Of a stretch of DNA of 64,000 bases, positions 4,490 to 64,000 are shown piece by piece; within the stretch, counting starts at the first letter, position 1, and every line of letters starts with the position of its first letter. The DNA comes from Tubulanus polymorphus (taxonomy: Eukaryota > Animalia > Nemertea), in NCBI RefSeq assembly GCF_964204645.1, contig NC_134036.1, positions 1,054,001 through 1,118,000 on the forward strand, in the 5' to 3' direction. Made by a program: the position numbers and the translations under genes. The notes under the pieces were generated by a model. The model worked only from the letters and a program-made list of their open reading frames with translations, was not told the origin of the DNA and did not search any database.

Positions 4490-9991
<5,502 letters not shown>

Positions 9992-18730: not shown

Positions 18731-18775
18731 CGACTGGAGGACTTTGTAAGTTTGTCTGGTCAGTGCGGTGACCAT

Positions 18776-22120: not shown

Positions 22121-25100
22121 CTAACTAAGGTTCACATAAGTGTCGTGTCCTTCTAAATACAATATCATCAAATCATGCAGTAACTTGTATTGTTCCTTTA
22201 AAAACGACAAAAAGAAAGTACATCAATAAAATTACTCGTGAAAATACACAGAAATCGATTAATTTCTTACCAAATTTGGAATGAATTGAGGTCGAGTCAT
22301 TCGTAATTTTTGTATACAGTGATAGATATCGATTTGTTCGCTAGATGGCGCTTTGGAGATCAGTTCAAATGCCGCACAAAATATCCCCGTTCTCGTTGTG
22401 CTGTCCCTGTAAAATTTGCATAATCGATAAATATATAGATGATTTTTTGAATAATATTGACTGACGTTGCTAAGATACGAACATGCAATGCACAACAATA
22501 GGACTTGTGACGTGTTCTCTTGTAACTAAATTCACAAATTCAAAAAGATCCTGTACATCAGGAACTGGTTCATCCTCAGGCCATCCTAAAAATTGGATCT
22601 GACGAATCTGATGCGATTCCTGTGAGATCAAAGAAATAAGATTGATTTGATCAAATTGATCTGATCACGTCAAACTAAATAACGATGCCAAAAATGCAGC
22701 CATATTTCTCTGAACAGTAGCTACCGAAACAACTCAACATACATTCTGTTTTTGGAGGATCAAATCCCGACGAACGATGGTCTTACAGGGCAATGATACC
22801 TCCTCCACAGTGACAGCAATAGGACCAAATTTAATACTTCCAACTCCAGGCCAATAGCTTGCATATGTCTAAAATCAAAAGATATATTTTAGAAGATACC
22901 TGCAAAGCAAACAGACCTATACAAGGAAGGCAGTGCTAGACTAGGAGTAAGCCTTACCGGATCTTGTGGATATTCTTGATGCATCATTACAATGAGTTCA
23001 CAGTTATAATCAAAGATCATTTGCCAGAAATCAATAATTGTATTTGCCAATGGACTTTGTGTAGCTATAAACACGTTGGTATCTGTGATCGTCTGTTAAA
23101 AGGAAAGTATTTCAATCAGATTCTTATAACTCATCGATATCTCAACTGAAGAATATCGAGGCTTAATGCCCCCCTCCACCGGATATTCTACGGATGGCTA
23201 TTAAATCAGAATCAAACTCACGTGCACAAATGTAGCATTGATGAACCCTTTATGTGAGAGTTGCGGTTGATACTGTGCCTCAGGAAGGATGTCTTTGTAT
23301 CGAGACTTGTAAACATTGTTGAGTAGTTTGGCCACTGCTAGTGATTCCTCGTCTTGAATCGGAGTAGATGCCTTCAATACCTGTATTAGAAAAAAACTCA
23401 TTGAGAAAATCGTTTCCTCAAAACCAACTCAAGGAAGAACGATTTAATTGCTGCCATCCTGTTTTTTGTTCCAGGATCGAACCCTTCATGTCATTTTGGC
23501 CGATCTTAATACGTACAAGAAATTGTTCCTCTATTTTATCAGACACGTTTTTAGATACTGGTCGCGTTGCCTTTCTTTCCTCGTATGATTCTCTGAAACT
23601 CGTGGTCGGATATGCCACCGGTCCCAGTACCAGTTCCTCCAGTAGAATCTGGTGCACGAGAATGTACTGTTTCTGCAGGGAATGGTAATAAAACATATTG
23701 AAGAAGTTCTGGATCTTGAAAACGTGAAATAAAAGACAGTAACTTTATTAAAATTTACCATATTTTGGATCATTTCTGGTCTTTGTGGTCGTAATTTCCT
23801 AAACATGTCGAATACGTTAACGAGTCCATCTTTCTTAGCTTTTTCAAGAAGCTGCTCCGTTGCGATATAACAACCTGTCCTTCCAGCACCAGCCCTGGGA
23901 ACACAAAACAAGCCATAACATTTCTACACGTCTCCTTAGCAGTAAAGGACTGGAAGATTTCGAATACATTTACCTGCCATGAATCAGCACAAGTCCTTGA
24001 TCCGGGTCGGTAAGACGCTGTTTGATGAACTGTTGCATACGAACAACAGATGAAGCCGGGAACGGTACACCATGATCCGGCCACCCTCGATAGTGAAACA
24101 CTATCAGATTATGTGCTTGTTTGTGGCCACGCTATAAAATAAATCCAACGTTACTCATCGATAGAGACTGGTTATAGATATTGCTTATGTGATACAATGT
24201 AACATCGAAACAAAACCTCATCATAAAATGTTGTCATATCGATGTCTACACGTACGAAGTCGTTTGAAATTACAGATAACAACACTTATAACTAATGGTA
24301 AAACAAGAGTATGATCATTACCTTTTTAATCGACAGGAAATTAACCTCTGCCGGAGGCTCAGTGTGTTTTTCCATTTTCTCTGCAACTGTCACTGTAATA
24401 TCTCCATATCGACCTATTGCATCCAGTTTTGTGGGCCAATATCGATGACACTTCACCTGCAATTGGAATATGAAAAGACACATTTTTATGATTCTTCTGT
24501 TTCCACAGCACTATTCGAAAGTGTTTTTGCAACCTTCTTATCTTTGCCTTGTCCTTCAGTCAGATCAGTAAGTACAATAATAGCCGGACATTTCTCTTGC
24601 CAAATCATCCGCCAATGGTCATTGATTGTAGATGGCAATGGAGCTGAAAGAGCAAGTTAGATGAGCGTCCAAGTAACATAAACATATAGAACATGGGATA
24701 GTTAACAAGACTTACCCTGGCAAGCAATGCATATCATATGACCAGTAAATCCCTGAAAATCAAATATCTATATCAACTACAACATTATGAGCACGTGAAA
24801 AAACCTCTCAAGAACAGAAGGATTGATTCCTTACCCGAATATAGTTGGCATTGATGTAATCTGATGTTGGATCTTCACCGATTTGTTCCAGAACAACTCT
24901 AGTCGAATCATCTAGAAAAACAACACAGCTAAGTCAATAGAACGACAAAAAGTTATAGAAATAATTCTTGTATGTTCTTTTAAATGCGATAGAACGTATT
25001 TGGACATGATGAACAGGTAATACTTACAGGCCAAAATGTTTGGAAACCTGTTTTTCTCAAGATTGTCCACTTTCTCAGCGCACTCGCTCAATTCTCGTCG

Positions 25101-28100
25101 CAACTTAAGAACACTCTAAAGACAAAATAGATCCAAAAAATAATCACATGTCTTACCGACGAGCAGTTTTAACCTCCCTGCAATTTTACCTGGAATTCTT
25201 CGCTCATATTCTTCCACTCATCAGAGGTCTTCATCAAAGTGTCTCCCAACAGGTCACAAATCATAGTAGCGCCTTTAGAAGCGATTTCGTAGTGATGATC
25301 CTCGCCATCTTGCGTTTCGGGATCATGATAGATATTGAAATACGCGGAGCTTTCTATATAGACAGGATAAGAATCTTTGGTGTTAAAACATTAGGCTTCA
25401 ACTTTCAAAATCTAAAAGCTTCATTAGACGAACCTCTTGAAAATGCAGAATTTACATCAGCTGAATTTTCTTGTCTTGGGATACCCTTCAATCTCACCAA
25501 AGGTTTACCAATAATGTTATCGGAAGGTGAAATATTCTCCATGGATACATCTGCATTGTTGGATGTTTCTCTAGTTTTGAACCCACCGCGTCTGAAAGAT
25601 GTGAAAAGCTTGAGGCGACCGCGTTGTGGGTAACTGAATTAGGGGTATTTCTGTGAATAGGGGGCATCGGATGATCGTCAAATGATAATGTTATAGAGGT
25701 CGCCACTATTCACTCGTACCTCCAAACTATTAATAGAACAACGGCCACCAATAACAGTATAAGAACAGCTGCAACAACGCCACCTATTATCCCTGCATTA
25801 CTAGACGATGCTTTAACAGTGATTCTCTCTTGTTGTTCTATTGGTGGATAATGCTTAAAAGTTTCCTGGAAAGTCAAGAAGAAATGGACAATTCCAAATT
25901 GGAAACGACAATTTGCATTGAAACACTAGATGAACTCACTCCGTTATAATTGACAACGATTCCTAAAATAAAACTGTAAGATTTCCCAGTTTCTAGAGGA
26001 GCATTAAAGTAACCATTATAGTTACGTGTATCACCAACTGTAAACTCAGAGGGCACTTCCGGTGGTAGAACTGCAGTAATATAAACTGATAATCCTCGCT
26101 GTTTAGCTTCTCCGTACGAGACGTACTGTGATTGGTTGACTGCTCGCTTCCGGCGACGGTTGATTGGTCCATCGTGTTTCTTCACGATCACCTCGTAATC
26201 GCTGAAAATCAGAGAATATCCAGTTTAAAAAAATCATGCGTTATTTATGGATAAATGTATGGAGGACACTTACGTAATGTTACCAGTGTTAACACGTGTT
26301 ATTTGAAGTGTAACAGTCGTGTCTGTTACCGCTGCGTTCTTGAAAACCAGTTGAGGAATTGTTATTTTACCTGAAATATTAGTTACTTCAACTGGTGACA
26401 CGTGACATCAATGGTTACTTGGGGTTGATGTTTTAACGACTCACCTGTCCAAAATCTAACACTGGCAGGCGAGCCTTCACCTTTACTATTCGAGGAAAAA
26501 ATCGAACATTTATATTGAGTAAAAGGTATCAGTGACGTCGTTATGTCTAAAGTTGTGATGGAGCCTTCGATTTTAGATTTGTTAACTGTTTTTATCTTTG
26601 GTAAAGGTGTTGTGGAAGTTGTACTGATGGGTTCACACGTGAGCTGAAAACAGAATATGTAAGAGTAGAATAGTCTGCGCGCGAGGTTACAGTTAGTGCC
26701 TCCTACAGGTCAATACAAGTTAATTCCTACCCGATAATTGATGACGTCACAATTTGGAATGTTTGCTGCTGTCCATGTCAATGTAGTTTTCATTGTGTCC
26801 CATGTGAATGAGAAGTCGAGAGAAGCGGGAGGTTCTGGTACTGAAATAAATACCACAGATAGATTTAGTTTATACGATTCATGAATTGACATATACTTGA
26901 TGACGACGGCAACCTATAACCATCTTTAGGAGTCTAATGTATCTACAGTAAAACAAACATGTTTAACACAATTCTGTGTTTAAATTGATGATTAAGAGTT
27001 TATTAGAATGAGGGGTTTTTACCTGCACACAAAGTCTGTATAGTTAGTATTGGACTAGTCAGACTCGCAGTTGATATAAATTGATTGTTCACTAATTTCT
27101 GTAGACTAACAGCTATCTTATACCCGGTATTAGGAGTTAAACCAGTAATTGTGTGATGTGTAAGGATTCCTGCAGATTCCTGATTAGTCCAAGTGTTTTC
27201 TGATATCTTACGATAAACGACTTGATACTGAACGCTGACAGTACCACGTCCTGAATCTACTACAGAACCCGAGTAAGCTTTCCAACTGACTAATACACTG
27301 TTATTTGTCAGCGCAAATTTTCTTAATTGAGAAAACGACTTAAATTCTGAAAAAGGAAATTGGTTTGTATTAGAGTTAAACCAATATTTTATTTTCGGTC
27401 ATTTCAGATTCATATTGGTACGATATTTAGGGAATAGGGAGTGAGATTCTTAGGAATCTCTGATTCAGTGTAATATACCTGACTCGCACCACTTTCCGAT
27501 GTAATTCTGCGAACAGCCAGATTGACAGATACCACTCAAATAGTCACAACTTTCACTGTTGTTGTAACATCTACATTCAATCATACATCCAAATGAGTTC
27601 GATCCCTTACTGCAATAGCCGGGCGCTAAACATAAATTTTAAACATTTTAAAGGCGATATAAAAAAGCTAATATTTTCATTAAAAAGTAACTGAATATTT
27701 TTTAATCACTAATCGTTAGTTAAACAATTCATAAAATTGATTTATAATCTATTTTCATTCTTTACAATTTTATAAAGTTATGCAAAACTCACCGATATAT
27801 TTGAACCCGAAAACTTCTATTTCTCTTAGGTTGAGATACTCTGCTTTACCAATGTTCTTGTGATGAACGGTGACGTATCGTCCAACTATAGGACCTGGGC
27901 TGCATGGTAATGTTTTATTTGTACCACAGAGAGGGGGGCCCTGGTAAGCACATTTCTGGTTAGATGTAAAAATACTCGGGCTTTTTCCGACTCGAATCTC
28001 CAGGTTGCGCGAACGTTTTTCTGAAAAGAAAATATACAGTTGAAGAAATAATAAACTCGATGCAAAAAATTCTTTTCAAGTTGTCTTCGAATCAAATTTT

Positions 28101-31100
28101 AACTCATAACTCGTGGACCTGGGTCCAGTGTTCCACAAACCTCGGTAGAAAATCAACTCAAGAGTTTTAATTTTAAACTCATCTCGAGTTAAACGTAACT
28201 GAAAACTGTGGGATTATTTATTGTTCGTAGAATCAATATTTGGTTGGTTATAAGAATATTCTTTTTAGTTGAGAGTAAATGAAGTCTATCTGAAGTACTA
28301 TCCAATCATATTTAACCAACATAGAATTTCTTGCCGTACGTTCAGTTCTAGTTGACTTTTAGTGAATAGTCTCATATCCTGTTCATATTTGTTGGTCTTA
28401 TTGTCATATAATACAATGTCGTAAATGTGACAGGTATATCAGCCTCGAATCCCGAACAACAAATAATTCTTATGTTTTATTTACAATTCTAGTTTGCAGA
28501 TATCTAGGCAGAAAACCCATTATCTATTATTGCTTTGCTTATTTAACAAACTTTTTGAGTTGGAAGTCGTTTCGTTTATCACATTTTATTTAACATAATC
28601 AATTATATATCAAACATTGATAATTAGTACTCACTCCATTCAGCGTAACAATCGGCTGCGTCTGTTCTATCCCATAGTGTAACTTCATGTACCACGTATT
28701 GAGTTCCGAGATCAATTCTAATCCAGGCGTCTTGATCCTCATTAGTGTGACATAGTTCAGCACCACCACTTGTTACCGTCTGACCATCTGTACATTTACT
28801 ACCGGGTGAGAGAGTGGATGACATGTTAACTGTTTTACCACGAGCCACGTTACCTACAAAACACATTTTGTGTAGAAGCGATTTAGACACAGCGGAAAAT
28901 TATCTTCAAAAAATTTCTTAAAAGCATTTTTCTTGAGACCTTGTTTTTCAAAACTTTTCACATCATTATTCCTGTTATGATTCATGTATGGGCAGTTCAA
29001 TAATAACCGATCACATGGCAGGTTTGAGTAGTTAATCCGTTAATCTAGGATAAATCTGAGGTTCAGTGATATTTGACCTGACTAACTGGAGCAGAAACAG
29101 AAACTTTACCGATTTGACAAGCTGGTCCGGTCCATCCTGGTGGTGTCCAGGGATATGGAGTTTTTATTGTAGACTCACATGCAGTGTTAGGATTTGGACA
29201 CGTTAAAGCGCCATTTATATTCTGACCCTTTGTTGGACAAACATTCATGGCTGTATTACTGCAATGACACTCCCAACCAGTACAACTCTTCCCAAAACAT
29301 TTTGCTGAAATGACGAAAACATGGTTTTGAAACCTTCAGGAATTTGTAGAATCGTCTCGTTCCATTTTTGAATTACCTGCAGTCGCCGTTTGGTAAGATA
29401 CAGTTTGGGTGTAGACTAACTTCTGAGTGACGTCATTCTTTACACCAACTCTAACTTCATAATCAGTATATGGTTCTAATCCTGTTAGTGTGTGGCCGGT
29501 AGGTTGCGCCACTGTTGTGGTCCATATTTGTCCGAGTTGTTTATATTCGACTTGATAAACAGCTTTAGTGACGTCACACTGTAACTCTGCAGCAGTTAAA
29601 GCCTGCAACATAATAATAATTCACTACACGTTTGTATCGTGTGTCAGTGAAAGAGAAGGTGCACATTTTCTTTGCTTCCAATGGAAATAAATGAACATCA
29701 GGTGAATTTATGTAATTCTGCTCGAGACACACTTACGGTCCATGCAAGTATCAGATAGGCTGTCTGGAGCCACGTGTTACTGTTCTCAACCGCTGTGGAC
29801 ACCACACGTACATCTTTAGGACCGTTTAATGGATCTACAGTAAAACAAACATGTTTAACACAATTCTGTGTTTGAATTGATGATTTAAGAGTTTATTAGA
29901 ATGAGGGGTTTTTACCTGCACACAAAGTCTGTACAGTTAGTATTGGACTAGTCAGACTCGCAGTTGATACAAGTTGACCGTTCTCTAATTTCTGTAGTCT
30001 AACATCTATCTTATACCCGGTATTAGGAGTTAAACCAGTAATTGTGTGATGTGTAAGGATTCCTGCAGATTCCTGAATAGTCCAAATGTTGTCTGATATC
30101 TTACGATAAACGACTTGATGCTGAACGCTGACAGTACCACGTCCTGAATCTACTACAGAACCCGAGTAAGCTGTCCAACTGACTTTTACACTGTTATCTG
30201 TCAGCGCAGATTTTGTTAATTGCGAAAACAACTTAAATCCTGAAAAAGGATATCAACTTATACTGACGTACGTTTCACGGTTATTTTACTTTCAGTCATG
30301 TTCACTTGGCATCATTTTCTATTCATATTGGTTACTATATTTAGGTAGTTGGAGTGAGATTCCCAGGAATCCATGATTCAGTGTAATATACCTGACTCGC
30401 ACCACTTTCCGATGTAATTCTGTGAACAGCCAGATTTACAGATACCACTCAAATAGTTACAATTACTTTCACTGTTGTTGTAACATGAATAACATTCAAT
30501 CATACATCCAAATGAGTTCGATCCCTTACTGCAATCACCGGGCGCTAAACAAACATTTAAAAGTAACAGTAACTTTCGTTTTCATTTCAAAAATTGTTCG
30601 ATTTTTCAGAGATTATGTTCTTAGTCTCCAGAAATTCAATCTAGTCTTAACATTTAGAAAATATCATTTGTTCGATATTTTGGGTAAATTCTTATTACAA
30701 ATATCACTGAATATTTTTGAGAAAGGGAAAATTTGTTTTCATACGTTCTCAATTTTACATATAAAGTTATGCAAAATTGTTTGACATTCTTCCACGAGTC
30801 AATGAATATTTTTCAATCGACCTAATTTTTGTAATCTGTATAATGTATGATCAAATAGATTTCACAGAGGTAGTTATGAAAAACTTACCGATATATTTGA
30901 ACCCGATAACTTCTATTTCTGCCAGGCTGAGATACTCTGCTTTACCAATGTCCTTGTGATGAACGGTGACGTATCGTCCAACTATAGGACCCGGGCTGCA
31001 TGATAATTTTTCATGTTCACCGCAAAGAGGAGATTCCTGGTAAGCACATTTCTGGTTAGATGTAGAAATACTCGGGCTATTCCCAACTCGAATCTCCAGG

Positions 31101-36490: not shown

Positions 36491-36662
36491 CGGTTTTATA
36501 GACAAATCATTGGTTTTTCCCCGTGTTACAAAAACAGGTCTTCGATGAATGAACGTAGATATTAAAGGAATGCGCATTTATATTAGAAAGATCAATATGC
36601 ATAATAATATTGAATATAGAAGTTTCCAGGGGCCGAATATTTTATTCGTTTCGTTTCGTTTT

Positions 36663-42409: not shown

Positions 42410-42567
42410 TTTATATAAAGCAAAGGAAATGCGATTTAGTTGCAAACCGATGCACCAAGTTAGTTCACACTTTTATTCCTTCAGTTCCAAAACTCAAGTC
42501 TTATTTTAGTTGTTGTTTTTAGATCTATCAAAATGATTTCTTCATTTCTTCTCTTCAAGTTGTAGTT

Positions 42568-51500: not shown

Positions 51501-53645
51501 ATTCTGTTCAAGTTCTTTTGAAAAATAAGTAAAGAGGCCGTGCATAAAGTACGTACGCTTGACTTGCGGTTATTTTTAACCCTCCATCCCATGTATGTTT
51601 TTGATATCTCTCCGAGTACATATGAGAGAGAACCCTGTGAAACTGAATTTGTCAGGATTCATGCCCTAAACAAGAGTGGGAAATTACCAGGAAACCCCAC
51701 GAAATATAGGAGGCATTTGTAAAAATCACATTGTGTTTCGTGCAACTGTAAATATTAACCCCTAAGGAAAAGTATGTACACTTTGAGCTTCCCTTCTACC
51801 CCCCCCCCCCCACTACAGGCGCACGGCCCATAACACAAATTTATTGTTATCGACTGAAAATTTTCGGAAAAGTTGATTCAAAATTTTCCAATGACGTATT
51901 TTTTCAGACACATTGTTGTCGAACTGACTTCATTTACAGATTATTGATTATTGATGACTCAGAGTTCGATATTTCGGTAGAGTTCAATATTTCAACTCAT
52001 CTTGTTTAAACGTAGGGTAACTGAAAACTGTATGGAACTGAGTCCGGGATATTTATTTGTGATTCCTAGAATCGATCATTAATTGTTTGATTTTGAAGAT
52101 ATTTCATCTTTTAAAGGGAGTTTATATTCAAAGAGGCTTTTCGAGTTTAAAGTTGTATTTTTTTTCTATCAGATTTGACCGAATGAAATAATCAATGAAA
52201 TAATCAACAATAATAATTTATACTCACTCCACTCACTCCACTCAGCGGTGCAACCAGCCGCGTCTGTTCTATCCCAAAGTGTAACATTATGTACCACGTA
52301 TTGAGTTCCGAGATCAATTCTAATCCAGGCGTCTTGATCCGCTTCAGTGTGACAAATCTCTTTACCACCAATCCAAGTATTCGTAGCACTTACCGTCCGA
52401 CCATCTACACATTTACTACCGGAATGGGCATAGTAAGTGGATGACATTGTAACTGTTTTACCACGAGCCACGTTTCCTACAAAACACATTTTGTGTAGAA
52501 TCAATTTAGATTCAGCAGAAAATTATTTCATGATTTTTTTCGAAACATACATTTTATTTTTGTGATACACTTTTTCTTCACGCGATGAACCAATTAGAGT
52601 CTCAGTTTATTGAGTCGCAGCAGTTCCCCGGATGTTTCATGTCTGACATTTTTATCAACGAAAATCTGAATTATTTCAATAATTTATCACGCGAGGTATT
52701 AGAGTTAATCCGTTAATCTAAAAAAACTGGGGTTCAGTAATATAAAACCTGTGATCCCTATTAACTGGAGCAGAAACCTGACCCCGGTTTACTGGAGCAG
52801 AAACAGTTGATACAGAAAACTTACCGATTTGACAAGCTGGTCCGGTCCATCCTGGCGGTGTCCAGGGATACGGAATTTTTATTGTAGACTCACATGCAGT
52901 GTTAGGATTTGGACACGTTAAAGCGCCATCTATATTCTGACCCTTTATTGGACAAACGTCCAAGGCTGTATTACTGCAATGACACTCCCAACCAGTACAA
53001 CTCTTCCCAAAACATTTTGCTGAAATTACAAGACGAAATTATTTTACCAGAACAATTCTGACAGTGACTGTTTCTTTCTGTAGTTCTTCTCTGAACTCTC
53101 CACTCCCGACAATTGATAGTTGGAATCCTGACAGTGACAGAGTTTCTTTCTGTAGTTCTTCTCTGAGCTCTCCACCCCCGACAATTGATAGTTTGAATCC
53201 TGACAGTGACAGAGTTTCTTTCTGTAGTTCTTCTCTGAGCTCTCCACCCCCGACAATTGATAGTTTGAATTCTGACAGTGACAGAGTTTCTTTCTGTAGT
53301 TCTTCTCTGAGCTCTCCACCCCCGACAATTGATAGTTTGAATCCTGACAGTGACAGAGTTTCTTTCTGTAGTTCTTCTCCGAGCTCTCCACCCCCGACAA
53401 TTGATAGTTTGAACCCTGACAGTGACAGAGTTTCTATCTGTAGTTCTTCTCCGAACTCAACATCGCCGACAATTGCCTTGAAACCGATGGCACCTCTTAG
53501 GGCCGGGTCTGTTATAATAGCAGATTTATCATTTCTACGTTTCAACTAATGAATTATTATTGATTAACTCACCTGATGTGTTTGTGATGAATAAACACAG
53601 AATGAACAACAGCAGAAAACGAAAGATGTTTCTTTCACGGTACAT
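42568..53645 (-). CDS. Receptor-type PTP-like gene, copy B: SP-EGF-like-F-type lectin-EGF-about 6 FN3-membrane-proximal domain-TM-PTP D1(C>G)-PTP D2
   Basis: SP exon 53573-53645. Lectin exons ~52226-52476 and ~51158-51397. FN3 exons span ~47000-50603. TM ~46264-46409. D1 has WPDHGVP and HGSAGAGRTG (GGC codon at 44490-44492). D2 has HCMNSTTRTG. Last exon 42568-42642 ends ...DTYMTLN*. Confidence 0.87.
49200..49960 (+). mobile_element. Penelope-like retroelement 3' remnant in an intron of copy B
   Basis: ORF 49219-49470 QRINEHR...SGIA...DHQFDFQNSKLI...RHIVESAL resembles a PLE GIY-YIG C-terminus. A degenerate hammerhead CTGATAA-TGGCTGTT..AACAGCC-GAAACGTT lies at ~49916-49950. The segment is absent from the homologous introns of copies A and S. 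Confidence 0.7.
49547..49728. mobile_element. MITE nested in a Penelope-like remnant
   Basis: TIR GGGGCCGGTTCC / GGAACCGGCCCC with internal GTCTTAAG-type repeats. Confidence 0.7.
53056..53475. repeat. Same minisatellite, ~6 copies, in the homologous intron of copy B (about 1.3 copies at 39873-39965 in copy S)
   Basis: Same 72-bp unit at the same intron position. Confidence 0.95.
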
Positions 53646-56600
53646 TTTGTTTTGCGGAATGACGAGTTATGATATCATTTTTCTATGTGATTAACTTCCT
53701 TTGAATTTTCAAATAAATCATCTTAAAGGAAGTTTAAACTTTCAAAGTTCACAATTGCTAGTTTATTCTGTTCTGAGGGGGGGGGGGGGTAGAGGTAGGG
53801 AAGGAGGCCAGAACAGAACATCAAGGGTCACCGTTTAACACGATGAGTCTTACAACCGAGAAAACAAATCTTTGAAAAGTAAAACAGAAATTGTATCATC
53901 AAAAGAAAACTACACAGTTTAATTGATGGTGTTCTCAGTGAACACGATAGACTGGGCCCCCTTTCATGTAAAATGAGACAAACTATAGGTTTTTCCCCCA
54001 TATCAAACAAAATGATTATAAATATAGAAATATAGTCTTGGATAAGTAGATACTACAAAAGAAGTGTAAATAAAAAACTATAGATTATTTCTAAACATGA
54101 TATTGTGTGATCATTTAAAATCATGAATCATTACTTCCTAAATAACCCAGGACCCCACCTCTACATACTCTCCGCAAATAATATTTTCAGAAATAACTGA
54201 ACAAATTGATGCATAATATTTAGAGATAAACCGATTATTCGCACGGAGAGCAGGTGTGACAGACAGTTGTGTATATAGTAGTAACTTCATCAATAAACAG
54301 TGACCAACAGTGAAATGATATTGATAACAAAGAACAAGAAAATAACGAATAAAACCAGGATATTTTATAGAATATCATGTATTGCTTATTTACATTATAA
54401 TTGATACGATGAAAATAAAATTCATTCATTTATTAAAATTTATATCGAGGAGATAAATCAGAATTACTATAATACAAGTCTTCTTTATATTGAAAGTTCT
54501 TTACATATCATAAGCTGTCAATCATTCAATCATTATAAGCTGTCTCTATTTTATAAGCTGTCTCTTTTTTTAAGCTGCCTCTATTGTATAAGCTGTCTGT
54601 GCGCCTGTTTTAAAGTATCTCGTATCTTAAAACATATACACACGATGAAACCGCAGTAATCGTGGAATAGGGCTATAGGTCTATATACGAGAGCTACGTT
54701 AATCTTTAGGTACAAGAAATACGTGTATATTTTATATAAAGCAAAATAATGGCGAATTAGTTGCAAACAGAACCAAGTTAGTTTACACTTTTACTCCTTC
54801 AGTTCCAAAACTCAAGTCTTATTTAGTTGTTGTTTTTAGATCTATCAAAATGATTTCTTCATTTCTTCTCTTCAAGTAGTAATTCTAATTGAGGGTCATA
54901 TAAGTGTCGAATCCGTGGAAGTTGAATATCACAAGGTCATGCAGCAACTTGTATTGTTCCTAAAAATGAAAAAAAGTAATATCAATAACTGACACTATCA
55001 ATTCTTTCTTAGAATATTTAGAATTTAATTTCGTACCAAATTTGGAATGAATTGAGGGCGTGTCATTCGTAGTTTTTGTATACACTGGTAGATATCGATT
55101 TGCTCGCTAGATGGCACCTTGGTAATCAGTTCAAACGCCGCACAAAATAGCCCCGTTCTCGTTGTGCTGTTCCTGTAAAATTTGCATAATCGATAAATAT
55201 GTGATGGTGTTTTGAATAATTGACTGACGTTGCTAAAATACGAACATGCAATGTACAACAATAGGACTGGTGACGTGTTCTCTTGTAACTAGATTCACAA
55301 ACTCGAATAGATATTGTAAATCAGGAACCGACTCATCCTCAGGCCATCCTAAAAACTGGATCTGACGAATACGACGCGATTCCTGTGAAATCAAAGAAAT
55401 AAAATTAATCTGGCCAGGCAATGTTAAATAATGTTAATGGTAATGTTAAATAGCAATGTCAAAGAAGGGTAATTCCGTAAAATGCGGCCATATTTCTCTG
55501 AACTTGGCTACCGAAAATAAATCAACATACATTCTGTTTTTGGAGGATCAAATCCCGACGAACGATGGTCTTACAGGGCAATGAAACTTCCTCCACAGTG
55601 ATCGTAAAAGGACCGAATTTAATACTTCCAGCTCCAGGCCAATAGCTTGCATATGTCTGAAATCAGAAGATGTATTCTAGCAAAGGATCCCCGACCAAAC
55701 TTTCATACTTTTAGGAGATATATTATAGATAAGGCAATGGTAGAATAGGAGTAAGCCTTACCGGATCTTGTGGATATTCTTGATGCATCATTACGATAAG
55801 TTCACAGTTATAGTCAAAGATCATTTGCCAGAAGTCAGTAATTGTCTTTTGTAGAGGACTTTGTGTAGCTATAAACACGTTTTCATTTGTGATCGTCTGT
55901 AAAAAGGAAAGTAATTTCAATCAATCAGATTCTTACAACTCATGGATATCTCAACTGAAGAATTTCTAGGCCTAATGCCCCCTTTTCTCAGCCCAGATAT
56001 TCCATGGATGGCTATGAAATCATAATCAAACTCACGTGCACAAAAGAGGCATTAATGAACCCTTTATGTGAGAGTTGCGGTTGATACTGTGCCTCGGGAA
56101 GGATGTCTTTGTATCGAGACTTGTAAACATTGTTGAGTAGTTTGGCCACTGCTAGTGATTCCTCGTCTTGAATCGGAGTCGATGCCTTCAACACCTGCAT
56201 TAGAAAACAACTCATCGAGAAAATGTTTTCCTTAAAAAAAAACTAAGGAAGAACGATTTGGTCTCTAGTTTAATAAGGTCAGTGGATTCATTGCTGCCAT
56301 CTTAATGTATGTTCTCAGGCTTCGGGCCCTTCATCTCATTTTGGCCGATCTTAATACGTACAAGAAATTGTTCCTCTATTTTATCAGACACGTTTTTAGA
56401 TACAGGACGCGTTGCCTTTCTTTCCTCGTATGATTCTCTGAAACTCGTGGTCGGGTATGCCACCGGTCCCAGTATCAGTTCCTCCAGTAGAATCTGGTGC
56501 ACGAGAATGTACTGTTTCTGTGGTAAATGGTAATAAAACATATTGAAGAAGTTCTGGATCTTGAAAACGTGAAATGAGAGGCAGTAACTTTATTAAGATT

Positions 56601-57553
56601 TACCATGTTTTGGATCATTTCTGGTCTTTGTTGACGGAGTTTCCTAAACATGTCGAATACGTTAACGAGTCCATCTTTCTTAGCTTTTTCAAGAAGCTGC
56701 TCCGTTGCGATATAACAACCTGTCCTTCCAGCACCAGCACTGAGAACACAACACAAGCCGTAACATTCCTTAACGTCCCCTTAACGGTAAAGGACTGGAA
56801 GATTTCGAATTAATTTACCTGCCATGAATCAGCACAAGTCCCTGATCCGGGTCGGTAAGACGCTGTTTGATGAACTGTTGCATACGAACAACAGATGAAG
56901 CCGGGAACGGTACACCATGATCCGGCCATCCTCGATAGTGACAAACTAACAGATTATGTGCTTGTTTGTGGCCACGCTATAAAATAAATGAAACGTTACT
57001 CATCGAGAGAGACTGGTTATAGACAATACTGATGTCAAACAATCTAACATCAAAACCCATCAGAACTCATTAACTATGTCGGAATACTGTAGTGAAACAA
57101 TGTAACAGCGAAACGAAACCTCATCATAAAATGTTGTTATAATTATCATATCGATGTATACACGTATGAAGTCGTTTGAAATTACAGATAACAGCACTTA
57201 TATAGGTCACTAGATGCCATGGTAAAACAAGAGTATGATCATACCTTTGTAATCGACAGGAAATGAACCACTGCCGGAGGCTCAGTGTGTTTTTCCATTT
57301 TCTCTGCAACTGTCACTGTAATATCTCCATATCGACCTTTTGTATTCAGTTTTGTGGGCCAATATCGATGACACTTCACCTGCAATTGGAATATGAAAAG
57401 ACACATTTTTATGATTCTTCTGTTTCCACAGCACTATTCGAAAGTGTTTTTGCAACCTTCATTTCTTTGCCATGTCCTTCAGTCAGATCGGTGAGTACAA
57501 TAATAGCCGGACATTTCTCTTGCCAAATCATCCGCCAATGGTCGTTGATCGTA

Positions 57554-60215
57554 CGGTTCCTGAACTTCGCTGAAAAAGCTGAAACACTGAAACGCTGAAT
57601 CGCTGAAATAAAAACGCTGAAATTTCAGGGAATTTCCGAAAAACGCCGAAATTTCAGGGAATTCCCGAAAAACGCTGAAATCGTGCTAGGTACCGACAAT
57701 ACACGTTTTGAAATAATATCCGGGCCGGTATCCGCTGCCGAGTCCTGAACCGTCTTTTAGTCTCCACCTTCGGTTACAGAGACATGCATGGGCAGTATGT
57801 GTGGAGTATACTTCTAGAGGGCCACTTGTTGAACAAATTAATTCGCTTGAAATCCGGATTTTTAATGCATACAGGCAGCATGATGAGGAAAACCCTTTCA
57901 CAAACCGTGCAAGCCAACTTAAACACTATGCTCAATATTCCAAGAATATGGTTTACTTCTATCGTTCATGTATAAAACAGGATTATAAGCAACTTTTCTT
58001 TTGTCAACACGTTGATGGGCGACGGACTATGGTATTCTCTGAAGGAGGTAAATTAAATTTGACAGCTAGTTATATAAATGATGCAGCTTTTGGACAAAAG
58101 GGATCTAACTAAATGTCTTTTTAATTCACCGTGGAATGGAATGGATTGACGCCAATGACATGCAGTAGGCCCCTACTTATAGGTCATACTAATTAGCGTC
58201 AACCAATTAATCTAAATCGGGCAAACCATTCAACAACTGTAATTTATTTGCTGTGTTGTGATAATAATAGGTTTTTTTTTTTTTAATGACATACCAACTG
58301 TTAGAAAAATGTACCGATTCTTATTTTTAGACTACTACGGTATCTATAAAAGGAGGAGTCATAGATAAAGTTGATTTGCTCAGCTGGACACACTTCTTGT
58401 CAAGTACATCATCTCAAGTATTGGGTGTTTTGTAAGTTTGATTTCAGTATTTATTTACTAAGTGCTGTTCCCTCGGGCCTCAGTGCTTTCAAACTAGGCC
58501 CACCCCATAGGCTATATCTCCAGAGTGTGTTAGCCACTATTCTTTTATTTCCTACTTTAAATGCACTTTTTTTCTATTTTTAGACTCGGGCTAAGAATGT
58601 GCAAATTTGAGATACTGAGAAATCAGATGGCACTAGTTAACTTGAACTGCGAAATTTGCAGCAGGATAGCTGAACGACACAATTTTTAAAAACAAAATGG
58701 CTATTCGAATGCTATTTCAGTGATAACTTGATTCAACCAGAGAGAAATAAGTCAATTGGGGATGTACAGTACACCCACTTTACTTCCCCGTTTTCCTGGT
58801 ACCAAATATTTTATCTTAAGCTAAGCAATATTCTAAGGTATGCTAGTGAATTTCATTAGAATATAAAGCAATGGAACCAGAATTCAAGCCCGAGTTAAGC
58901 GAACTATTGATTCTGATATAATGTAAGAACTGATTTCTTTTGTGTATTCTTATAATGTGTTAAGTATTATTTTAAGCTGTTAAATAATATAATTAGACAA
59001 ACGTCAAATTATTGGATCTTTCTTGTTGACTCGTTTAATTTTGTGAGTTTAGAGTTCCAGTCAATCCACAATGTGCAGTGCCTAGCCTTCATCTAGTACT
59101 AAAGCCAAGCCTGTGTATGGGAAAACGTTGTTCGACTCTCATAAGCCAGACAAATAAAAACTTGCAATACATTGCAGATAGAAGTCTCCAGCAAGTAGAC
59201 AGAGAAAGTAAACCAGGTTTTACCCCGTACCCTACCCGGCATCTTCACCTGTCAAGGGATTCGAACCCACTACACTAAAGCTGTTCTCCGAACCGCTTGA
59301 CCTCGAGTCGTTACTAGCCGACCAGAATCAGGTCGGGCCAATCACAGCGCTTGTTACAAACGACATTTGGCATCTATGGAATTTCCCGGTAAATGGACCA
59401 ATCAGCGAACACGTAGCGAAAACGGAAGTATTGTCGCGTGTTGATATATGACGTCATTCGCAAAAACGCCGGTAATGAAATCGCGCGTCGTGAGGCCAGG
59501 GGGCAGGTGGAAGCGAGTTTGGGAGCGATACTGGTCTCCTGGCAAGCGAGGATGCCTACCCGGGAACGAAAGACACTCCAAGACTCCTTCCTTGAAGAGA
59601 TTGTAGAAATATGGCACCCAATCGTAGTAATGCTAAGTACAGTATACTATGACGGTTGAACCTTTATTCACACCAAAATAGAATCAAAGTAGTCATAAGT
59701 TCCATGATAGCACTTAATTTGGGTTATCAGGTTCAGCCTTACTAGCTGTACTTTCATTCAGCTACTACTTTTGTATGAGACTTGGCAATGATAAGTTGGA
59801 AGAAATCACCAAATATAAGAAAAAATATTGAGAATTAATATTACTGTAATTAAGAATTTATTCAAATGAAGTGATAATTTCATTGTTAGATCGTACCGGT
59901 ATATGCGCATAAAACAAAAAACACATCTAACAATCCACGCAATCCGCAATCGATCAAGTCGAACATGACGACGACCTCAAGGCATGTCTCTGTAACCGAA
60001 GGTAGAGTCTAAAAGACGGTTCAGGACTCGGCAGCGGACACCGGCCCGGAAAGAATTTCAAAACGTGTATTGTCGGTACCTAGCACGATTTCAGCGTTTT
60101 TCGGGAATTCCCTGAAATTTCGGCGTTTTTCGGAAATTCCCTGAAATTTCAGCGTTTTTATTTCAGCGTTTCAGCTTTTCAGTGTTTCAGCTTTTTCAGC
60201 GAAGTTCAGGAACCG
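57554..60215. mobile_element. Non-autonomous Mutator/MULE-like DNA transposon, 2.66 kb
   Basis: Near-identical ~234-bp TIRs (57554-57787 and 59982-60215, starting CGGTTCCTGAACTTCGCTGAAAAAGC). Perfect 9-bp TSD TTGATCGTA at 57545-57553 and 60216-60224. No transposase ORF recognised. Superfamily is inferred from the 9-bp TSD plus long TIRs. Confidence 0.85.
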
Positions 60216-62230
60216 TTGATCGTAGATGGCAATGGAGCTGAAAGAGCAACCTACATGAGCGTAACATAAAAGAAATCAATTATGAGAAAGGTAACGAGAC
60301 TTACCCTGGCAAGCAATGCATATCACATGACCAGTTAATCCCTGAAAATGAAATATCCACATCATCTACAACAACATTAAAGCACGTGACAAACTTCTTA
60401 AGAACAGAAGGATTGATTTCTTACCCGAATGTAATTGGCATTAATGTAATCTGACGTTGGATCTTCGCCGATTTGTTCCAGAACAACTCTAGTCGAATCA
60501 TCTAGAAAAACAACACAAAATTATCTCAATAGAATGACATAAACTAATACAATAGAAAATATTAAAAAAGCAAAATCAATGGAAGTCAATAGACCTAATA
60601 GAGATGTTGCACTTGTACAAGGCAAGTCTTGTAAATACGACAGAACTTATGTAAACATGATGAACAGGTAATACCTACAGGCCAATATGTTTTGAAACCT
60701 GTTTTTCTTAACATTTTCCACTTTCTCAGCGCAGGCGCTCAATCCACGTCTCAACTTGAGAACACTCTACAGACAAAATAGATCCAAAAGATTGACGTAC
60801 ATGCTACCAGCAAGCCCCAAAGTGCCTTAAAACAAAATAGATCCTGAACATAATCACATGTCTTGCCAATGCGCAGTCCCAACTTCCCAGCAATCCTACC
60901 TGAAATTCTTCATTCATATTCTTCCACTCATCAGAGGTCTTCATTAAGGTCTCTCCCAACAGGTCACAAATCATAATAGCGCCTTTAGAAGCGATGTCGT
61001 AATGATGATCCACGCCATCTTGCTTACCGTGTACTGCTCTCGGATTATCATAGATATTGTAATACGCGGAGCTTTCTATATGGAGAGGAGTCACGAGTCA
61101 TTATAGTGTTAAAACATTGGGCTCCAAATACAAAAGCTTCATTAGACAAACCTATTGATAATGTAGAATTTACATAAGCAGTATTTCCTTTCCTTAGGAC
61201 ACCTCTCACTTTCAATCTTGCCAAAAATTTACCAATACTTTTATCAGAAATATACTCCATGGATACTTCTGCATTGTTCGATGTTTCTTTAGTTTTGAAT
61301 CCACCGCGTCTGGAAGATGTGAAATAGTAAAGGCGTCGAAATTGTGGGAACCTGAATGAGGGGGTCTCGGGGAATCGGACGATCGCTGAATGATGAAATA
61401 TTTGCATTGAATTAAAGAGGTCGCCACTATTCACTCGTACCTCCAAACTATAAATAGAACCACAGACACCAATAACAGTATTAGAACAGCTGCAACAACG
61501 CCACCTATTATTCCTGTAATACCCCACGGTGCCTTAACAATGATTCTCTCTTGCTGTTCTATTGGTGGATAATGCCGAAACGTTTCCTGAACAATGAACA
61601 AGAAAAGGCTTGAGGCTTTCAAATTGTAAATTACAATGTGTATGAAAGACGCATTTAAACTTTGTTTTTTTTTCGTGGAATTATCGAATCCAGATTCTGT
61701 TATTATCATTATTGTTCTTATTATTATTATAATCATTAATCATTATTATCAATTATCAAACACAAGATGAACTCACTCCGTTACAATTCTCAACGACTCC
61801 TAAAATAAAACTGTAAGATTTCCCAGTTTCTAGAGGAGCATTGAAGTAACCACTATAGTTTCGTGTATCACCAACTGTAAACTCAGAGGGCACTTCCGGT
61901 GGTAGAACTGCAGTAATATAAACTGATAATCCTCGCTGTTTAGCTTCTCCGTACGAGACGTACTGTGATTGGTTGACTGCACGCTTCCGGCGACGGTTGA
62001 TTAGTCCATCGTGTTTCTTCACGATCACCTCGTAACCGCTGCAATTCACAGAAAATATTTTTCTTTTAAATCACGCGTTATTTGTGGATAAAGGTTTTTA
62101 GGACACTTACGTAATGTTACCAGTGTTAACACGTGTTATTCGAAGTGTAACAGTCGTGTTTGTTATCGCTGTCTTCTTGACAACCAGTTGAGGAATTGTA
62201 ATTTTACCTGAAATATCAGCAATAGAACTA

Positions 62231-62726
62231 CTGTCTGTCACACCTGCTCTTCGTGCGACGTTTTGATCCGTAATTTCGTTAATAATCGGTTGATCTGTAA
62301 ATATTATGCATCAATATGTTCAGTAGGGAATTTGCATTCAGAAATAAAACATTAACTGGCATAAATTTGTTTGTGTTTTCATCCATCAGCGATAGTTTAC
62401 CCAGCATACGCTCGCGTAATGCTGAAAAACGGCTTTTATGGCCCGTCACGTGGCGCCACCTACTGTATTTTGATATGCTAATGAGCAGGTGATGACGTCA
62501 CTGTAACGTTTCCGAGCGTCGAGCGGGTTTTTCAGCATTACGCGAGCGTATGCTGAGTAAACTATCGCTGATAAATGAAAACAAAAACAACTTTAGTGAA
62601 AATTGTTGTTTATTTCTGAATGCAAATTCCTCACTGAACGAATTGATGCTTAATAAAGGTAGATAAACCGATTATTAACGAAATTAAGGACCAAAACGTC
62701 GCACGGAGAGTAGGTGTGACAGACAG
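62231..62726. mobile_element. Fold-back MITE with TA target duplication (Tc1/mariner-like)
   Basis: TA|CTGTCTGTCACACC...GGTGTGACAGACAG|TA with ~200-bp imperfect inverted arms. A partial copy of one end lies at ~54197-54267. Confidence 0.8.
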
Positions 62727-64000
62727 TAGTAACACGTGTCAATACATACTTGAGTTTGCTGTGTTCTGATTTGTTATAACTACGAGCAATTATCTATAAC
62801 CATTAGATAATTGCTCGTAGGTTAAAACGACTTACCCTTTGTGCAAAAGCTTACACTGTTGGGGCAAAGATTGAACAATTTACTGGTTGTAGGTCAGTTT
62901 AATTGATTGTAAGGAAATACTTTTGTTGGAAGCGTCCGAACATAATGGACTGCTCAATTTCTATCGACATAAATTCGGTTTCAAAATTACTGAGCAGCGG
63001 ACGGATTTGAGCATAGAATTCATTGAGGGTTTACCGACTTAATCTACTGTAGTTTTCTTAATTCAAAGTTTTCGGAGGTTTATTCCGAATTTGTAACACG
63101 GAATTAACAGGTTATTCAATTAAAGGTGATTTTGGGAGGTTTATCCTCGAAATTGTCTTCAAATAATAGGTATGTCCCTAGGGCCCTTCCATACATCTTG
63201 TGTTTGAATTGATGATTAAGAATTTATTAGCTCGAGGGGTTTTACCTGCACATATAGTTAGTATTGGACTAGTCAGACTCGTAGTTGATATAAGTTGACC
63301 GTTCCCTATTTTCTGTAGTCTAACAGCTATCTTATACCCGGTATAAGGAGTTAAACCAGTAATTGTGTGATGTGTAAGGCCTCCTGCAGAGACCTGATTA
63401 GTCCAAGTGTTTTCTGATATCTTACGATAAACGACTTGATACTGAAAGCTGACAGTACCACGTCCTGAATCTACCACAGAACCCGAGTAAGCTGTCCAAC
63501 TGACTCTTACACTGTTATCTGTCAGTGCAGATTTTCGTAATTGAGAAAACAACTTCAATTCTGAAAAAGGAAATTGGTTTGTATTGAAGAATATTTTACT
63601 TTCGGTCATTTTCGATTCATATTGGTTACTCTATTTAGGTAGTTGGAGTGAGATTCCTAGGAATCTATGATTCAGTGTAATATACCTGACTCGCACCACT
63701 TTCCGATGTAATTCTGTGAACAGCCAGATTCACAGATACCACTCAAATAGTTACACCTTTCATTGTTGTAACATCTACATTCAATCATACATCCAAATGA
63801 GTTCGATCCCTTACTGCAACCATCGGGCGCTAAAAAAAAAGAACAAGGAAATCTAAAAGTGATACGGAAAACTATTATTTTCGTGTCCATTTTTCTAATT
63901 TTCGATCTTTGGGAGGTTAATTCTTATTAGTCTCTCAATATTTTTGAATCAATCTCTTTATACCGATAACAGAAAAAAGGAAAAGCAGATACGAAAGACT

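What the first reader, a model, noticed from the sequence alone, without database searches (positions are those of the whole stretch)
22121..63829. Tandem locus of lectin-headed receptor pseudophosphatases with a secreted sibling: candidate diversifying glycan-recognition system
Seen: four paralogous units within ~42 kb (A, S, B, C) share an F-type lectin/EGF/FN3 ectodomain design; C's lectin exons would lie beyond the window. They show variable lectin loops, a fixed catalytic Cys>Gly in D1, conserved juxtamembrane Tyr motifs, different stalk lengths, one TM-less copy and one disrupted copy. Known: F-type lectins recognise fucosylated glycans in innate immunity and gamete recognition, and birth-and-death arrays with soluble decoys are typical of immune and allorecognition loci. 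Inference: these are glycan sensors that signal by scaffolding or pTyr binding rather than catalysis. Lectin-bearing RPTP expansions do occur in lophotrochozoans, so the novelty lies in this combination.
Basis: partly seen in the sequence, partly recalled or inferred. Interest (0 to 1): 0.9.

Follow-up and report, generated by a model that had tools for sequence, protein, structure and literature searches.

The report
Lectin-headed receptor pseudophosphatase gene array
A ribbon worm (Tubulanus polymorphus) carries a young, transcribed tandem family of cell-surface receptors that join a sugar-binding F-type lectin head to a tyrosine-phosphatase tail whose catalytic cysteine is replaced by glycine, so they probably bind rather than remove phosphotyrosine; what they recognise is unknown.

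Summary
The window is Tubulanus polymorphus (nemertean) chromosome DNA. My spliced models reproduce three RefSeq proteins exactly. A is 1820 aa with two lectin modules. B is 1789 aa with one lectin module and extra FN3 repeats. S is 513 aa, secreted, with no TM segment. C is a fourth copy that runs off the window; it is intact apart from a 2.66-kb terminal-inverted-repeat transposon inside a D1 exon.

The D1 catalytic Cys is Gly (GGC) in A, B and C. Genome-wide it is Gly in 17 of 21 copies. The change arose once, and the only nested Cys copy is a pseudogene. The WPD loop, the P-loop Arg and the Q-loop are kept. D1 and D2 are under purifying selection (omega 0.2-0.35). Spliced contigs from two studies confirm the introns, including the junction that forms the Gly motif.

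The lectin domain matches solved F-type lectins (E=5e-19). It has a conserved core and five indel-rich hypervariable loops. Family-wide omega is 0.85 overall and 1.07 in the loops, so positive selection is not shown.

The immune or allorecognition reading is untested. The genes carry automatic RefSeq names only, and I found no published description or non-Tubulanus counterpart. Other first-stage notes flag sister clusters in this genome.

The parts
22121..34107 (-). Gene A: receptor with two F-type lectin modules, FN3 stalk, TM segment, D1 (Gly) and D2. 34 exons, 1820 aa. Equals RefSeq 'receptor-type tyrosine-protein phosphatase T-like' (P0153).
   Evidence: The exon model reproduces P0153 at 1820/1820 residues with all introns GT-AG. 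Pfam domains. Spliced contigs match 10 of its introns.
23974..24131 (-). A, D1 exon carrying the WPD loop and ending ...I-H-G. The GGC (Gly) codon at 23976-23978 replaces the catalytic Cys. The next exon (23759-23894) begins the P-loop remainder (R-A-G-A-G-R-T-G).
   Evidence: Read directly from the DNA. The joint 23894|23974 is seen in contigs of runs X3 and X4, with no difference reported at the codon.
30889..32019 (-). A, first F-type lectin domain (exons 31777-32019 and 30889-31116).
   Evidence: Pfam PF22633. phmmer against PDB: 3CQO at E=5e-19, and 1K12.
27793..28853 (-). A, second F-type lectin domain (exons 28635-28853 and 27793-28020), produced by an internal module duplication.
   Evidence: Internal DNA repeat 26921-28024 ~ 29811-31129. 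Pfam.
25720..25865 (-). A, transmembrane exon.
   Evidence: A 25-residue hydrophobic run in P0153. Exon map.
32623..33975 (.). 71-72-bp minisatellite, 19 copies, inside intron 1 of A. Not coding and not a stalk.
   Evidence: TRF. It lies between exon 1 (34026-34107) and exon 2 (32394-32588).
36663..40139 (-). Gene S: secreted paralog with no TM segment (signal peptide, Cys-rich module, lectin, Cys-rich module, two FN3). 8 exons, 513 aa. Equals RefSeq LOC141913971 (P0169).
   Evidence: 513/513 identity. No hydrophobic run beyond the signal peptide in the printed sequence. RNA-type runs hold 0.28-0.54 of the region's words, against an exon share of about 0.41.
36641..36671 (-). 3' end of S: the former donor GT is now AT (36669-36670), the stop TAA is at 36663-36665, and an AATAAA follows at 36641-36646. 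Homology with A ends here.
   Evidence: Side-by-side sequence of A and S. End of the self-BLAST block at 36646.
42568..53645 (-). Gene B: receptor with one lectin module and a long FN3 stalk. 33 exons, 1789 aa. Equals RefSeq 'kappa-like' (P0155). Its D1 Gly exon is 44488-44645.
   Evidence: 1789/1789 identity. Motif I-H-G-S-A-G-A-G-R-T-G.
53054..53475 (.). The same minisatellite, 6 copies, in intron 1 of B.
54885..64000 (-). Gene C, which continues to window-equivalent 65980. All exons and splice sites are intact. It lacks B exons 7-14 (544 aa shorter). Its D1 Gly exon is 56819-56976.
   Evidence: Projection of B exons onto the window plus L023. No matching RefSeq protein was retrieved.
57554..60215 (.). 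2.66-kb non-autonomous DNA transposon with 235-bp terminal inverted repeats and a 9-10-bp target duplication. It splits a D1 coding exon of C.
   Evidence: Inverted repeat 57553-57787 / 59982-60216 at 96.6%. The split exon and the duplicated target are shown. At least 430 candidate copies in the genome, several 100% identical.

Best explanation
This is part of a lineage-specific multigene family in Tubulanus polymorphus. Genome-wide there are about 21 receptor genes and at least 5 secreted ectodomain-only paralogs.

The receptors have an R2B-like cytoplasmic region. In place of the MAM-Ig head they carry one or two modules of Cys-rich segment, F-type lectin, Cys-rich segment and FN3.

Shown:
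- The genes are real, tandemly duplicated, transcribed and correctly spliced.
- D1 lost its nucleophile (Cys to Gly) once, before an 18-member clade expanded.
- Every other active-site element is kept: the WPD Asp, the P-loop Arg and the Q-loop Gln.
- D1 and D2 evolve under purifying selection, while the ectodomain evolves 2-5 times faster at non-synonymous sites.
- The lectin core and its His/Arg/Arg residues are conserved, while five surrounding loops vary in sequence and length.

Inferred:
- The lectin heads bind carbohydrate or other surface ligands with paralog-specific specificity.
- The Gly-D1 works as a non-catalytic phosphotyrosine-binding or scaffold domain, as in STYX or PTPRU.
- Tyr motifs in the juxtamembrane segment, including YxN, are found only in the Gly clade and may help this role.
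- D2 has an atypical P-loop containing an Asp and has WPE, so it is probably inactive too.
- S-type paralogs would act as soluble competitors or opsonin-like partners.
- C was knocked out very recently by an active transposon, which illustrates birth-and-death turnover.
For: Identity and models: exact match to RefSeq proteins.

Domains.

Cys>Gly. Census of 17 Gly and 4 Cys among 21 D1 exons. The tree gives one origin, and the nested Cys copy is a pseudogene with a stop and a frameshift.

Retained pocket motifs.

Selection: D1 omega 0.26-0.35 and D2 omega 0.20-0.28. The non-synonymous deficit has p=0.01 to 4.5e-10. The ectodomain-versus-PTP N/S contrast has p=0.001-0.02.

Transcription: spliced contigs in runs X1, X3 and X4 from two studies match ten predicted introns.

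Lectin: conserved core with hypervariable loops in 18 to 24 domains.

Juxtamembrane motifs.

Precedents: in STYX, Gly replaces the catalytic Cys, and the cited work describes it as a phosphotyrosine-binding domain (PMC8622459). The R2B receptor PTPRU is described as a pseudophosphatase (PMC7320164, title and abstract).
Against: No binding or activity data exist.

The canonical F-type spacing RXDX4(R/K) is interrupted by a 4-12-residue insert, so fucose binding is not assured.

Lectin-domain omega is 0.85 overall and 1.07 in the loops. That is compatible with relaxed constraint and not only with adaptive diversification.

D2 keeps the Cys-X5-Arg signature, so residual catalysis by D2 is not excluded.

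The contigs laid on D1 exons can come from near-identical paralogs; for example, position 24084 reads T in all runs. Expression is therefore shown for the Gly clade and for several A-specific junctions, not quantified per gene.

Tissue and condition of expression are unknown.
Confidence: 0.6

Rival explanations
1. These are adhesion or wiring receptors. Like vertebrate R2B RPTPs, they mediate protein-protein (homophilic or heterophilic) cell contacts. The lectin-fold head serves as a protein-binding module, and the expansion encodes cell identity rather than glycan or non-self recognition.
For: The cytoplasmic region is closest to PTPRK/M/T/U at about 34% identity, with an Fn3_PTPRU membrane-proximal domain. 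The fucose-motif spacing is not canonical. Substitution rates are high in the FN3 exon as well as in the lectin loops.
Against: The His and the two Arg residues of the sugar-binding triad, and the core, are conserved in nearly all copies. Secreted ectodomain-only siblings are less expected for homophilic adhesion molecules. There is no MAM or Ig domain.
Confidence: 0.2
2. They are still phosphatases. D2, which keeps Cys-X5-Arg, has taken over catalysis, so the receptors signal by dephosphorylation and D1 is only regulatory.
For: D2 retains the Cys and Arg of the signature in all copies and shows the strongest purifying selection, with omega 0.20-0.28.
Against: The D2 P-loop has lost its glycines and carries Asp or Asn two residues after the Cys. 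The general-acid loop reads WPE, not WPD. From general knowledge of RPTP D2 domains and IA-2, features of this kind accompany inactivity.
Confidence: 0.12
3. It is a redundant, decaying array. The copies are young duplicates drifting towards pseudogenes, and the fast ectodomain evolution is relaxed constraint without function.
For: Lectin-domain omega is 0.85, with no significant positively selected class. One copy is hit by a transposon. Dispersed copies on C7 and C10 are pseudogenes.
Against: 24 of the 26 lectin domains for which both exons were recovered (30 loci examined), and all exons of A, B, C and S, keep frames and GT-AG sites. D1 and D2 show a significant non-synonymous deficit. Transcripts are spliced. 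Gly is kept in all intact copies of the clade.
Confidence: 0.06
4. It is an assembly artefact: the copies are haplotypes or collapsed or expanded repeats.
For: Marine invertebrates are highly heterozygous. The copies are adjacent and similar.
Against: The copies differ by 10-16% in DNA. They also differ in exon content, in a whole lectin module and in a transposon. Contigs of a DNA-type run (X2) match A-specific introns with no differences. RefSeq models each copy as a separate gene.
Confidence: 0.02

Closest known systems
Vertebrate R2B receptor tyrosine phosphatases (PTPRK, PTPRM, PTPRT, PTPRU)
   Same: Type I membrane protein with an FN3 stalk, an Fn3_PTPRU-type membrane-proximal domain, a long juxtamembrane segment and tandem D1-D2. 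These are the best non-Tubulanus matches, at about 34% identity over D1-D2.
   Different: There are no MAM or Ig domains; the head is a Cys-rich module plus an F-type lectin. The D1 nucleophile is Gly. The family has about 21 members in tandem clusters.
PTPRU, an R2B receptor pseudophosphatase (PMC7320164)
   Same: A receptor PTP whose D1 and D2 are both catalytically inactive. From my recollection of the paper, not read here, it is proposed to act as a scaffold.
   Different: From my recollection of the paper, not read here, PTPRU keeps the catalytic Cys and is inactive for structural reasons. Here the Cys itself is replaced while WPD, the P-loop Arg and the Q-loop stay.
STYX, the prototype Cys-to-Gly pseudophosphatase (PMC8622459)
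   Same: The same single substitution of the nucleophile by Gly in an otherwise intact signature. STYX works by binding rather than catalysis, and Gly-to-Cys restores its activity.
   Different: STYX is a small cytosolic dual-specificity-type protein. Here the change sits in D1 of a classical tandem-domain receptor and has been propagated through 17 paralogs.
F-type lectins (eel agglutinin 1K12, striped bass FBP32 3CQO, oyster bindin; review PMC5712786)
   Same: The domain aligns over its whole length with solved F-type lectins. It keeps the His and the two basic residues of the binding triad, and variability concentrates in the loops around the pocket. Multigene or isoform diversification is known for eel lectins and oyster bindin.
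   Different: The loop between RXD and the last basic residue is 4-12 residues longer and varies in length. The adjacent Cys pair is reduced to one Cys. The domain is fused to a receptor phosphatase, an architecture not mentioned in the review ('phosphatase' occurs 0 times).
Glycan-regulated RPTPs (LAR/RPTP-sigma binding heparan and chondroitin sulfate) - from general knowledge, not tested here
   Same: The idea that an RPTP ectodomain reads carbohydrate ligands.
   Different: Those receptors use Ig domains and an active D1. Here a dedicated lectin fold is paired with an inactive D1.

Membership tests
Classical receptor-type PTP (tandem-domain) | Signal peptide, single TM segment and two Y_phosphatase domains | tested here: met
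   Pfam PF00102 found twice. Hydrophobic TM run and N-terminal signal-like segment.
Classical receptor-type PTP (tandem-domain) | D1 signature (I/V)HCXXGXXR(S/T)G with a nucleophilic Cys | tested here: not met
   The Cys position is Gly (GGC) in A, B and C and in 17 of 21 genomic copies. The family is therefore filed as a pseudophosphatase in D1.
Classical receptor-type PTP (tandem-domain) | WPD general-acid loop and Q-loop in D1 | tested here: met
   WPD and Q..QY are present in all members. The KNRY motif reads KNRF.
R2B subfamily (PTPRK/M/T/U) | MAM domain plus Ig domain at the N-terminus | tested here: not met
   No PF00629 or Ig hit in P0153, P0155 or P0065, whereas the vertebrate hits carry PF00629.
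R2B subfamily (PTPRK/M/T/U) | Closest cytoplasmic similarity and an Fn3_PTPRU membrane-proximal domain | tested here: met
   PF23144 hit at E=3e-13. The best foreign hits are PTPRK at 33-36% identity.
F-type lectin domain | Sequence and fold homology to solved F-type lectins | tested here: met
   phmmer against PDB: 3CQO E=5e-19, 1K12 E=7e-8, and Streptococcus F-type domains. Pfam PF22633.
F-type lectin domain | His ... Arg-X-Asp with the same His-Arg spacing as FBP32 | tested here: met
   Ungapped alignment from His to RXD against 3CQO. His is conserved in 17 of 18 domains and Arg in 18 of 18; the acidic residue varies in a few.
F-type lectin domain | RXD-X4-(R/K) spacing of the third basic residue (motif as given in PMC5712786) | tested here: not met
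   A basic K-K-R stretch is conserved and aligns with the FBP32 Arg, but only after an insert of 4-12 residues that varies in length.
F-type lectin domain | Fucose or other carbohydrate binding | not testable with these tools
   Needs glycan arrays or calorimetry with recombinant domains.
Pseudophosphatase of STYX type | Nucleophile replaced by Gly in an otherwise intact signature that is kept by selection | tested here: met
   Omega 0.26-0.35 with a significant non-synonymous deficit.
Pseudophosphatase of STYX type | Binds phosphorylated ligands without hydrolysing them | not testable with these tools
   Needs biochemical assays.
Diversifying (positively selected) recognition family | omega significantly above 1 at ligand-contact sites | tested here: inconclusive
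   Parsimony counts on 21 unique lectin domains give omega 1.07 in the indel loops (p=0.32) and 0.66 in the scaffold. Two single sites reach p<0.05 uncorrected. Some young pairs exceed 1.
Birth-and-death tandem multigene family | Tandem duplicates of different ages, module gain and loss, and pseudogenes | tested here: met

The most novel reading that the evidence does not exclude
A nemertean-specific, non-enzymatic recognition-receptor system built from a receptor phosphatase. Hypervariable F-type lectin heads, in one or two per receptor and also as soluble forms, would recognise diverse glycans on microbes, prey, gametes or conspecific cells. Signalling would run through a D1 converted into a phosphotyrosine reader and through YxN-type docking tyrosines acquired only in the Gly clade. 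That would be an independent invention of a diversified innate or allorecognition receptor family.
Probability: 0.2. Interest if true: 0.85.

Novelty: new variant of a known kind. Interest (0 to 1): 0.6.

Why it matters
Receptor tyrosine phosphatases whose membrane-proximal domain has lost the nucleophile are rare, and an F-type lectin head on such a receptor was not found in the literature or databases searched here. This family offers about 17 natural Cys-to-Gly receptors next to three close Cys-bearing relatives in one genome. That is a ready-made comparison for how a phosphatase becomes a phosphotyrosine-binding or scaffold receptor. If the variable lectin heads do bind different glycans, the family would be a new kind of diversified surface-recognition system in a little-studied phylum. 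It would also add an architecture to the F-type lectin repertoire.

Tried and rejected
1. The minisatellites as a coding 'stalk'. Rejected: they lie in intron 1 of A and B.

2. EGF assignment. Pfam gives no match for either Cys-rich module, so 'EGF-like' rests on Cys spacing only.

3. My first reading of the D2 signature across the splice site was wrong. The RefSeq-identical model corrected it.

4. A functional Gly-to-Cys reversion. The single Cys copy nested in the Gly clade (C10) carries a stop and a frameshift, so it is a pseudogene.

5. Search for the architecture outside Tubulanus.
- The exhaustive search with a lectin exon was dominated by bacterial multi-lectin proteins and showed one family member only.
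- Three word-index searches returned only Tubulanus proteins with lectin plus PTP.
- These searches cannot prove absence; other nemertean proteomes may be missing from the databases.

6. Site-wise positive selection: not significant.

7. Haplotig artefact: rejected.

8. Handling of spliced models.
- Exons were searched by reference, and whole proteins only as database ids that proved identical to the models.
- Joining was done only inside scripts, for codon statistics.

10. Structure prediction, complex prediction and the atlas searches were not used, because sequence matches to solved structures were already decisive.
Full report
**What the window is**

The window is animal DNA at G000:C12:1054001-1118000, in a genome of 268 Mb in 77 contigs. 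A lectin-exon search retrieved a 1740-aa protein named 'receptor-type tyrosine-protein phosphatase kappa-like [Tubulanus polymorphus]', which lies on an 11,548,486-bp contig. The organism is therefore the palaeonemertean Tubulanus polymorphus, in its RefSeq assembly.

**The observation**

A DNA self-comparison shows four units on the minus strand. They share 84-90% identity, introns included.

I used RefSeq family members as guides and required GT-AG introns. The resulting exon models translate to database proteins without a single difference:
- A: 34107-22121, 34 exons, P0153, 1820 aa.
- B: 53645-42568, 33 exons, P0155, 1789 aa.
- S: 40139-36663, 8 exons, P0169, 513 aa.

Exons were searched by reference, and full-length work used the database ids.

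Pfam on single exons and on the proteins gives:
- two Y_phosphatase domains;
- an Fn3_PTPRU/PTP_tm membrane-proximal domain;
- four to five fn3 domains;
- F5_F8_type_C_2, twice in A and once in B and S.

The lectin domain aligns over its whole length with solved F-type lectins: FBP32 (3CQO) at E=5e-19, eel agglutinin (1K12), and streptococcal domains. The two Cys-rich modules have no Pfam match, so 'EGF' is not confirmed.

The 71-72-bp minisatellites (19 and 6 copies) sit in intron 1 of A and B and are not coding.

**The four units**

- A contains an internal duplication of the whole module of Cys-rich segment, lectin, Cys-rich segment and FN3.
- B has eight extra exons (7-14), mostly FN3.
- C lacks those exons in frame. 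It continues beyond the window, where its signal, Cys-rich and lectin exons lie at window-equivalent 65980-64155.
- Every exon of C keeps its frame and its AG/GT sites. The exception is the equivalent of B exon 23, inside D1, which is split by 2.66 kb (57554-60215).
- The insert has 235-bp terminal inverted repeats and a 9-10-bp target duplication. It belongs to a family with at least 430 candidate copies, several 100% identical.
- C is therefore a very recently disrupted gene.
- S is a partial duplicate of the first module. At the position of A's exon-8 donor, GT has become AT. A TAA follows two codons later and an AATAAA 16 nt further on, and homology to A stops there.
- RefSeq holds four further siblings without a TM segment.

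**The catalytic site**

In A, the D1 exon ends ATT CAT GGC AG|gtaaat, and the next exon starts after cccag. The signature therefore reads I-H-G-R-A-G-A-G-R-T-G, and the Gly codon lies wholly inside the exon. B and C read I-H-G-S-A-G-A-G-R-T-G.

A genome-wide search with this exon finds 21 copies. Seventeen carry GGC and four carry TGC.

A tree of the 3.2-kb loci gives this picture:
- The three Cys copies at C12:278-307 kb are sister to an 18-member clade.
- That clade contains all the Gly copies plus one Cys copy on C10.
- The C10 copy has an in-exon stop and a frameshift, so it is a decaying pseudogene and not a functional reversion.

The substitution thus arose once and has been kept in every intact descendant.

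All other D1 elements are unchanged between the Cys and Gly members: WPD, the P-loop Arg, and Q..QY. D2 keeps Cys-X5-Arg, but with an Asp or Asn and no glycines in the loop, and with WPE.

**Selection**

Pairwise Nei-Gojobori estimates among A, B and C:

| Region | omega |
|---|---|
| D1 | 0.26-0.35 |
| D2 | 0.20-0.28 |
| First lectin exon | 0.4-2.2 |
| FN3 exon | about 1-1.8, one pair 6.2 |

- The non-synonymous deficit is significant: p=0.01 to 0.0006 for D1, and 3e-5 to 4.5e-10 for D2.
- The N/S ratio of lectin or FN3 is significantly higher than that of the PTP domains (Fisher p=0.001-0.02).
- I extracted both lectin exons from 30 family loci. Both exons were recovered at 26 of them, and 24 of these were intact. 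Twenty-one were unique.
- Parsimony counts on their tree give omega 0.85 overall, 1.07 in the indel-bearing loops (p=0.32 against neutrality) and 0.66 in the scaffold.

The ectodomain therefore evolves fast and the tail is constrained, but positive selection is not demonstrated.

**Lectin anatomy**

Across 18 RefSeq domains the core is almost invariant. This includes the Cys residues, the His, the Arg of RXD and a K-K-R stretch. Five loops vary in sequence and length.

By alignment with FBP32, and by the review of the family (PMC5712786), these are the loops that ring the sugar pocket. The published motif ends RXDX4(R/K). Here 4-12 extra residues separate the Asp from the basic residue. The triad is present, but the canonical spacing is not, and sugar specificity cannot be assumed.

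**Transcription**

Four runs hold the S region. When laid on 22101-28100:
- Runs X1 (2024) and X3/X4 (2014, a second study) give contigs that skip exactly the predicted introns with CT..AC ends.
- The matched joints are 22618|22742, 23672|23759, 23894|23974, 24911|25028 and 26840|27023.
- Others carry a few intervening letters or the 37-nt micro-exon in between.
- X2 covers introns and behaves as DNA.

The joint 23894|23974 is the one that assembles the Gly signature, and no difference is reported at the Gly codon. Because D1 exons are about 95% alike among paralogs, some contigs may come from sister genes (position 24084 reads T in all runs).

The RNA-type runs hold 0.28-0.54 of the words of the S region, whose exons make up about 0.41 of it. 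This fits expression of S.

**Wider family and comparison**

- The cytoplasmic part is closest to vertebrate PTPRK, at about 34% identity.
- The only proteins combining PF22633 with PF00102 in the three word-index searches are from Tubulanus. One is a distant member on another chromosome with a canonical D1 (P0177).
- The F-type lectin review never mentions a phosphatase.
- A review of RPTP ectodomains lists no lectin-domain receptor.
- STYX is the known precedent for Cys-to-Gly with retained binding (PMC8622459).
- PTPRU is the precedent for an R2B receptor pseudophosphatase (PMC7320164).
- Juxtamembrane tyrosines of the form S-A-Y-(F/Y)-N-I-Y and H-H-Y-(E/D)-I occur only in the Gly clade.
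- One member outside the window carries 17 YxN motifs in 25-residue repeats.
- That YxN is a Grb2-type SH2 docking consensus is my own knowledge, not tested here.

**Verdict**

The locus is one segment of a larger family in this genome. Other first-stage notes already flag a cluster about 309 kb downstream and a copy on another contig.

The mechanism is well motivated but inferred: lectin-guided recognition with non-catalytic signalling through phosphotyrosine binding or scaffolding. Adaptive diversification and an immune or allorecognition role remain open.

The genes have automatic RefSeq names but no description that I could find. I class the finding as a new variant of a known kind.

Noticed in passing
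window 57554-60215: Non-autonomous DNA transposon with 235-bp terminal inverted repeats, a 9-10-bp target duplication and no long ORF. There are at least 430 candidate copies in the genome, several 100% identical, so the family looks recently active. Mutator-like is my guess from the repeat and duplication lengths.
   Followed up: partly
window 32623-33975 and 53054-53475: The same 71-72-bp minisatellite sits in intron 1 of A (19 copies) and of B (6 copies). It is open in all three minus-strand frames, which mimics long ORFs of up to 547 aa.
   Followed up: yes
G000:C12 about 1.325 Mb (protein P0162, outside the window): A Gly-clade member has a 475-aa juxtamembrane segment made of 25-residue repeats. 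It carries 17 YxN tyrosine motifs. The Cys-bearing relatives have none.
   Followed up: partly
G000:C10:9377401-9380576 (L018) and G000:C7:6503962-6511615 (L015, L039, L050): Dispersed family copies on other chromosomes are pseudogenes with stops, frameshifts or truncation. The C10 copy is the only one in the Gly clade that reads Cys at the catalytic position.
   Followed up: yes
protein P0177 (31.9-Mb chromosome, outside the window): A distant Tubulanus receptor has an F-type lectin domain and a fully canonical D1 signature and Q-loop, at 38% identity to A in the PTP part. The lectin-RPTP fusion therefore predates the Cys-to-Gly clade.
   Followed up: partly
window 5009-5410 (+) and 12830-13135 (+): Upstream neighbours on the plus strand: an exon with a DPPIV_N match (dipeptidyl-peptidase-like) and an exon with an Aminotran_5 match (phosphoserine-aminotransferase-like by eye).
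   Followed up: partly
window 5975-6173, 7367-7685, 9099-9301, 18769-18923: Four further unrelated minisatellites (units of 47, 71, 50 and 20 bp) in the gene-poor first third of the window.
   Followed up: no
window 24084: All four runs, including the DNA-type run, read T where the assembly has C in A's D1 exon. The likely cause is contigs collapsed from near-identical paralogs, which have T there, rather than editing.
   Followed up: no
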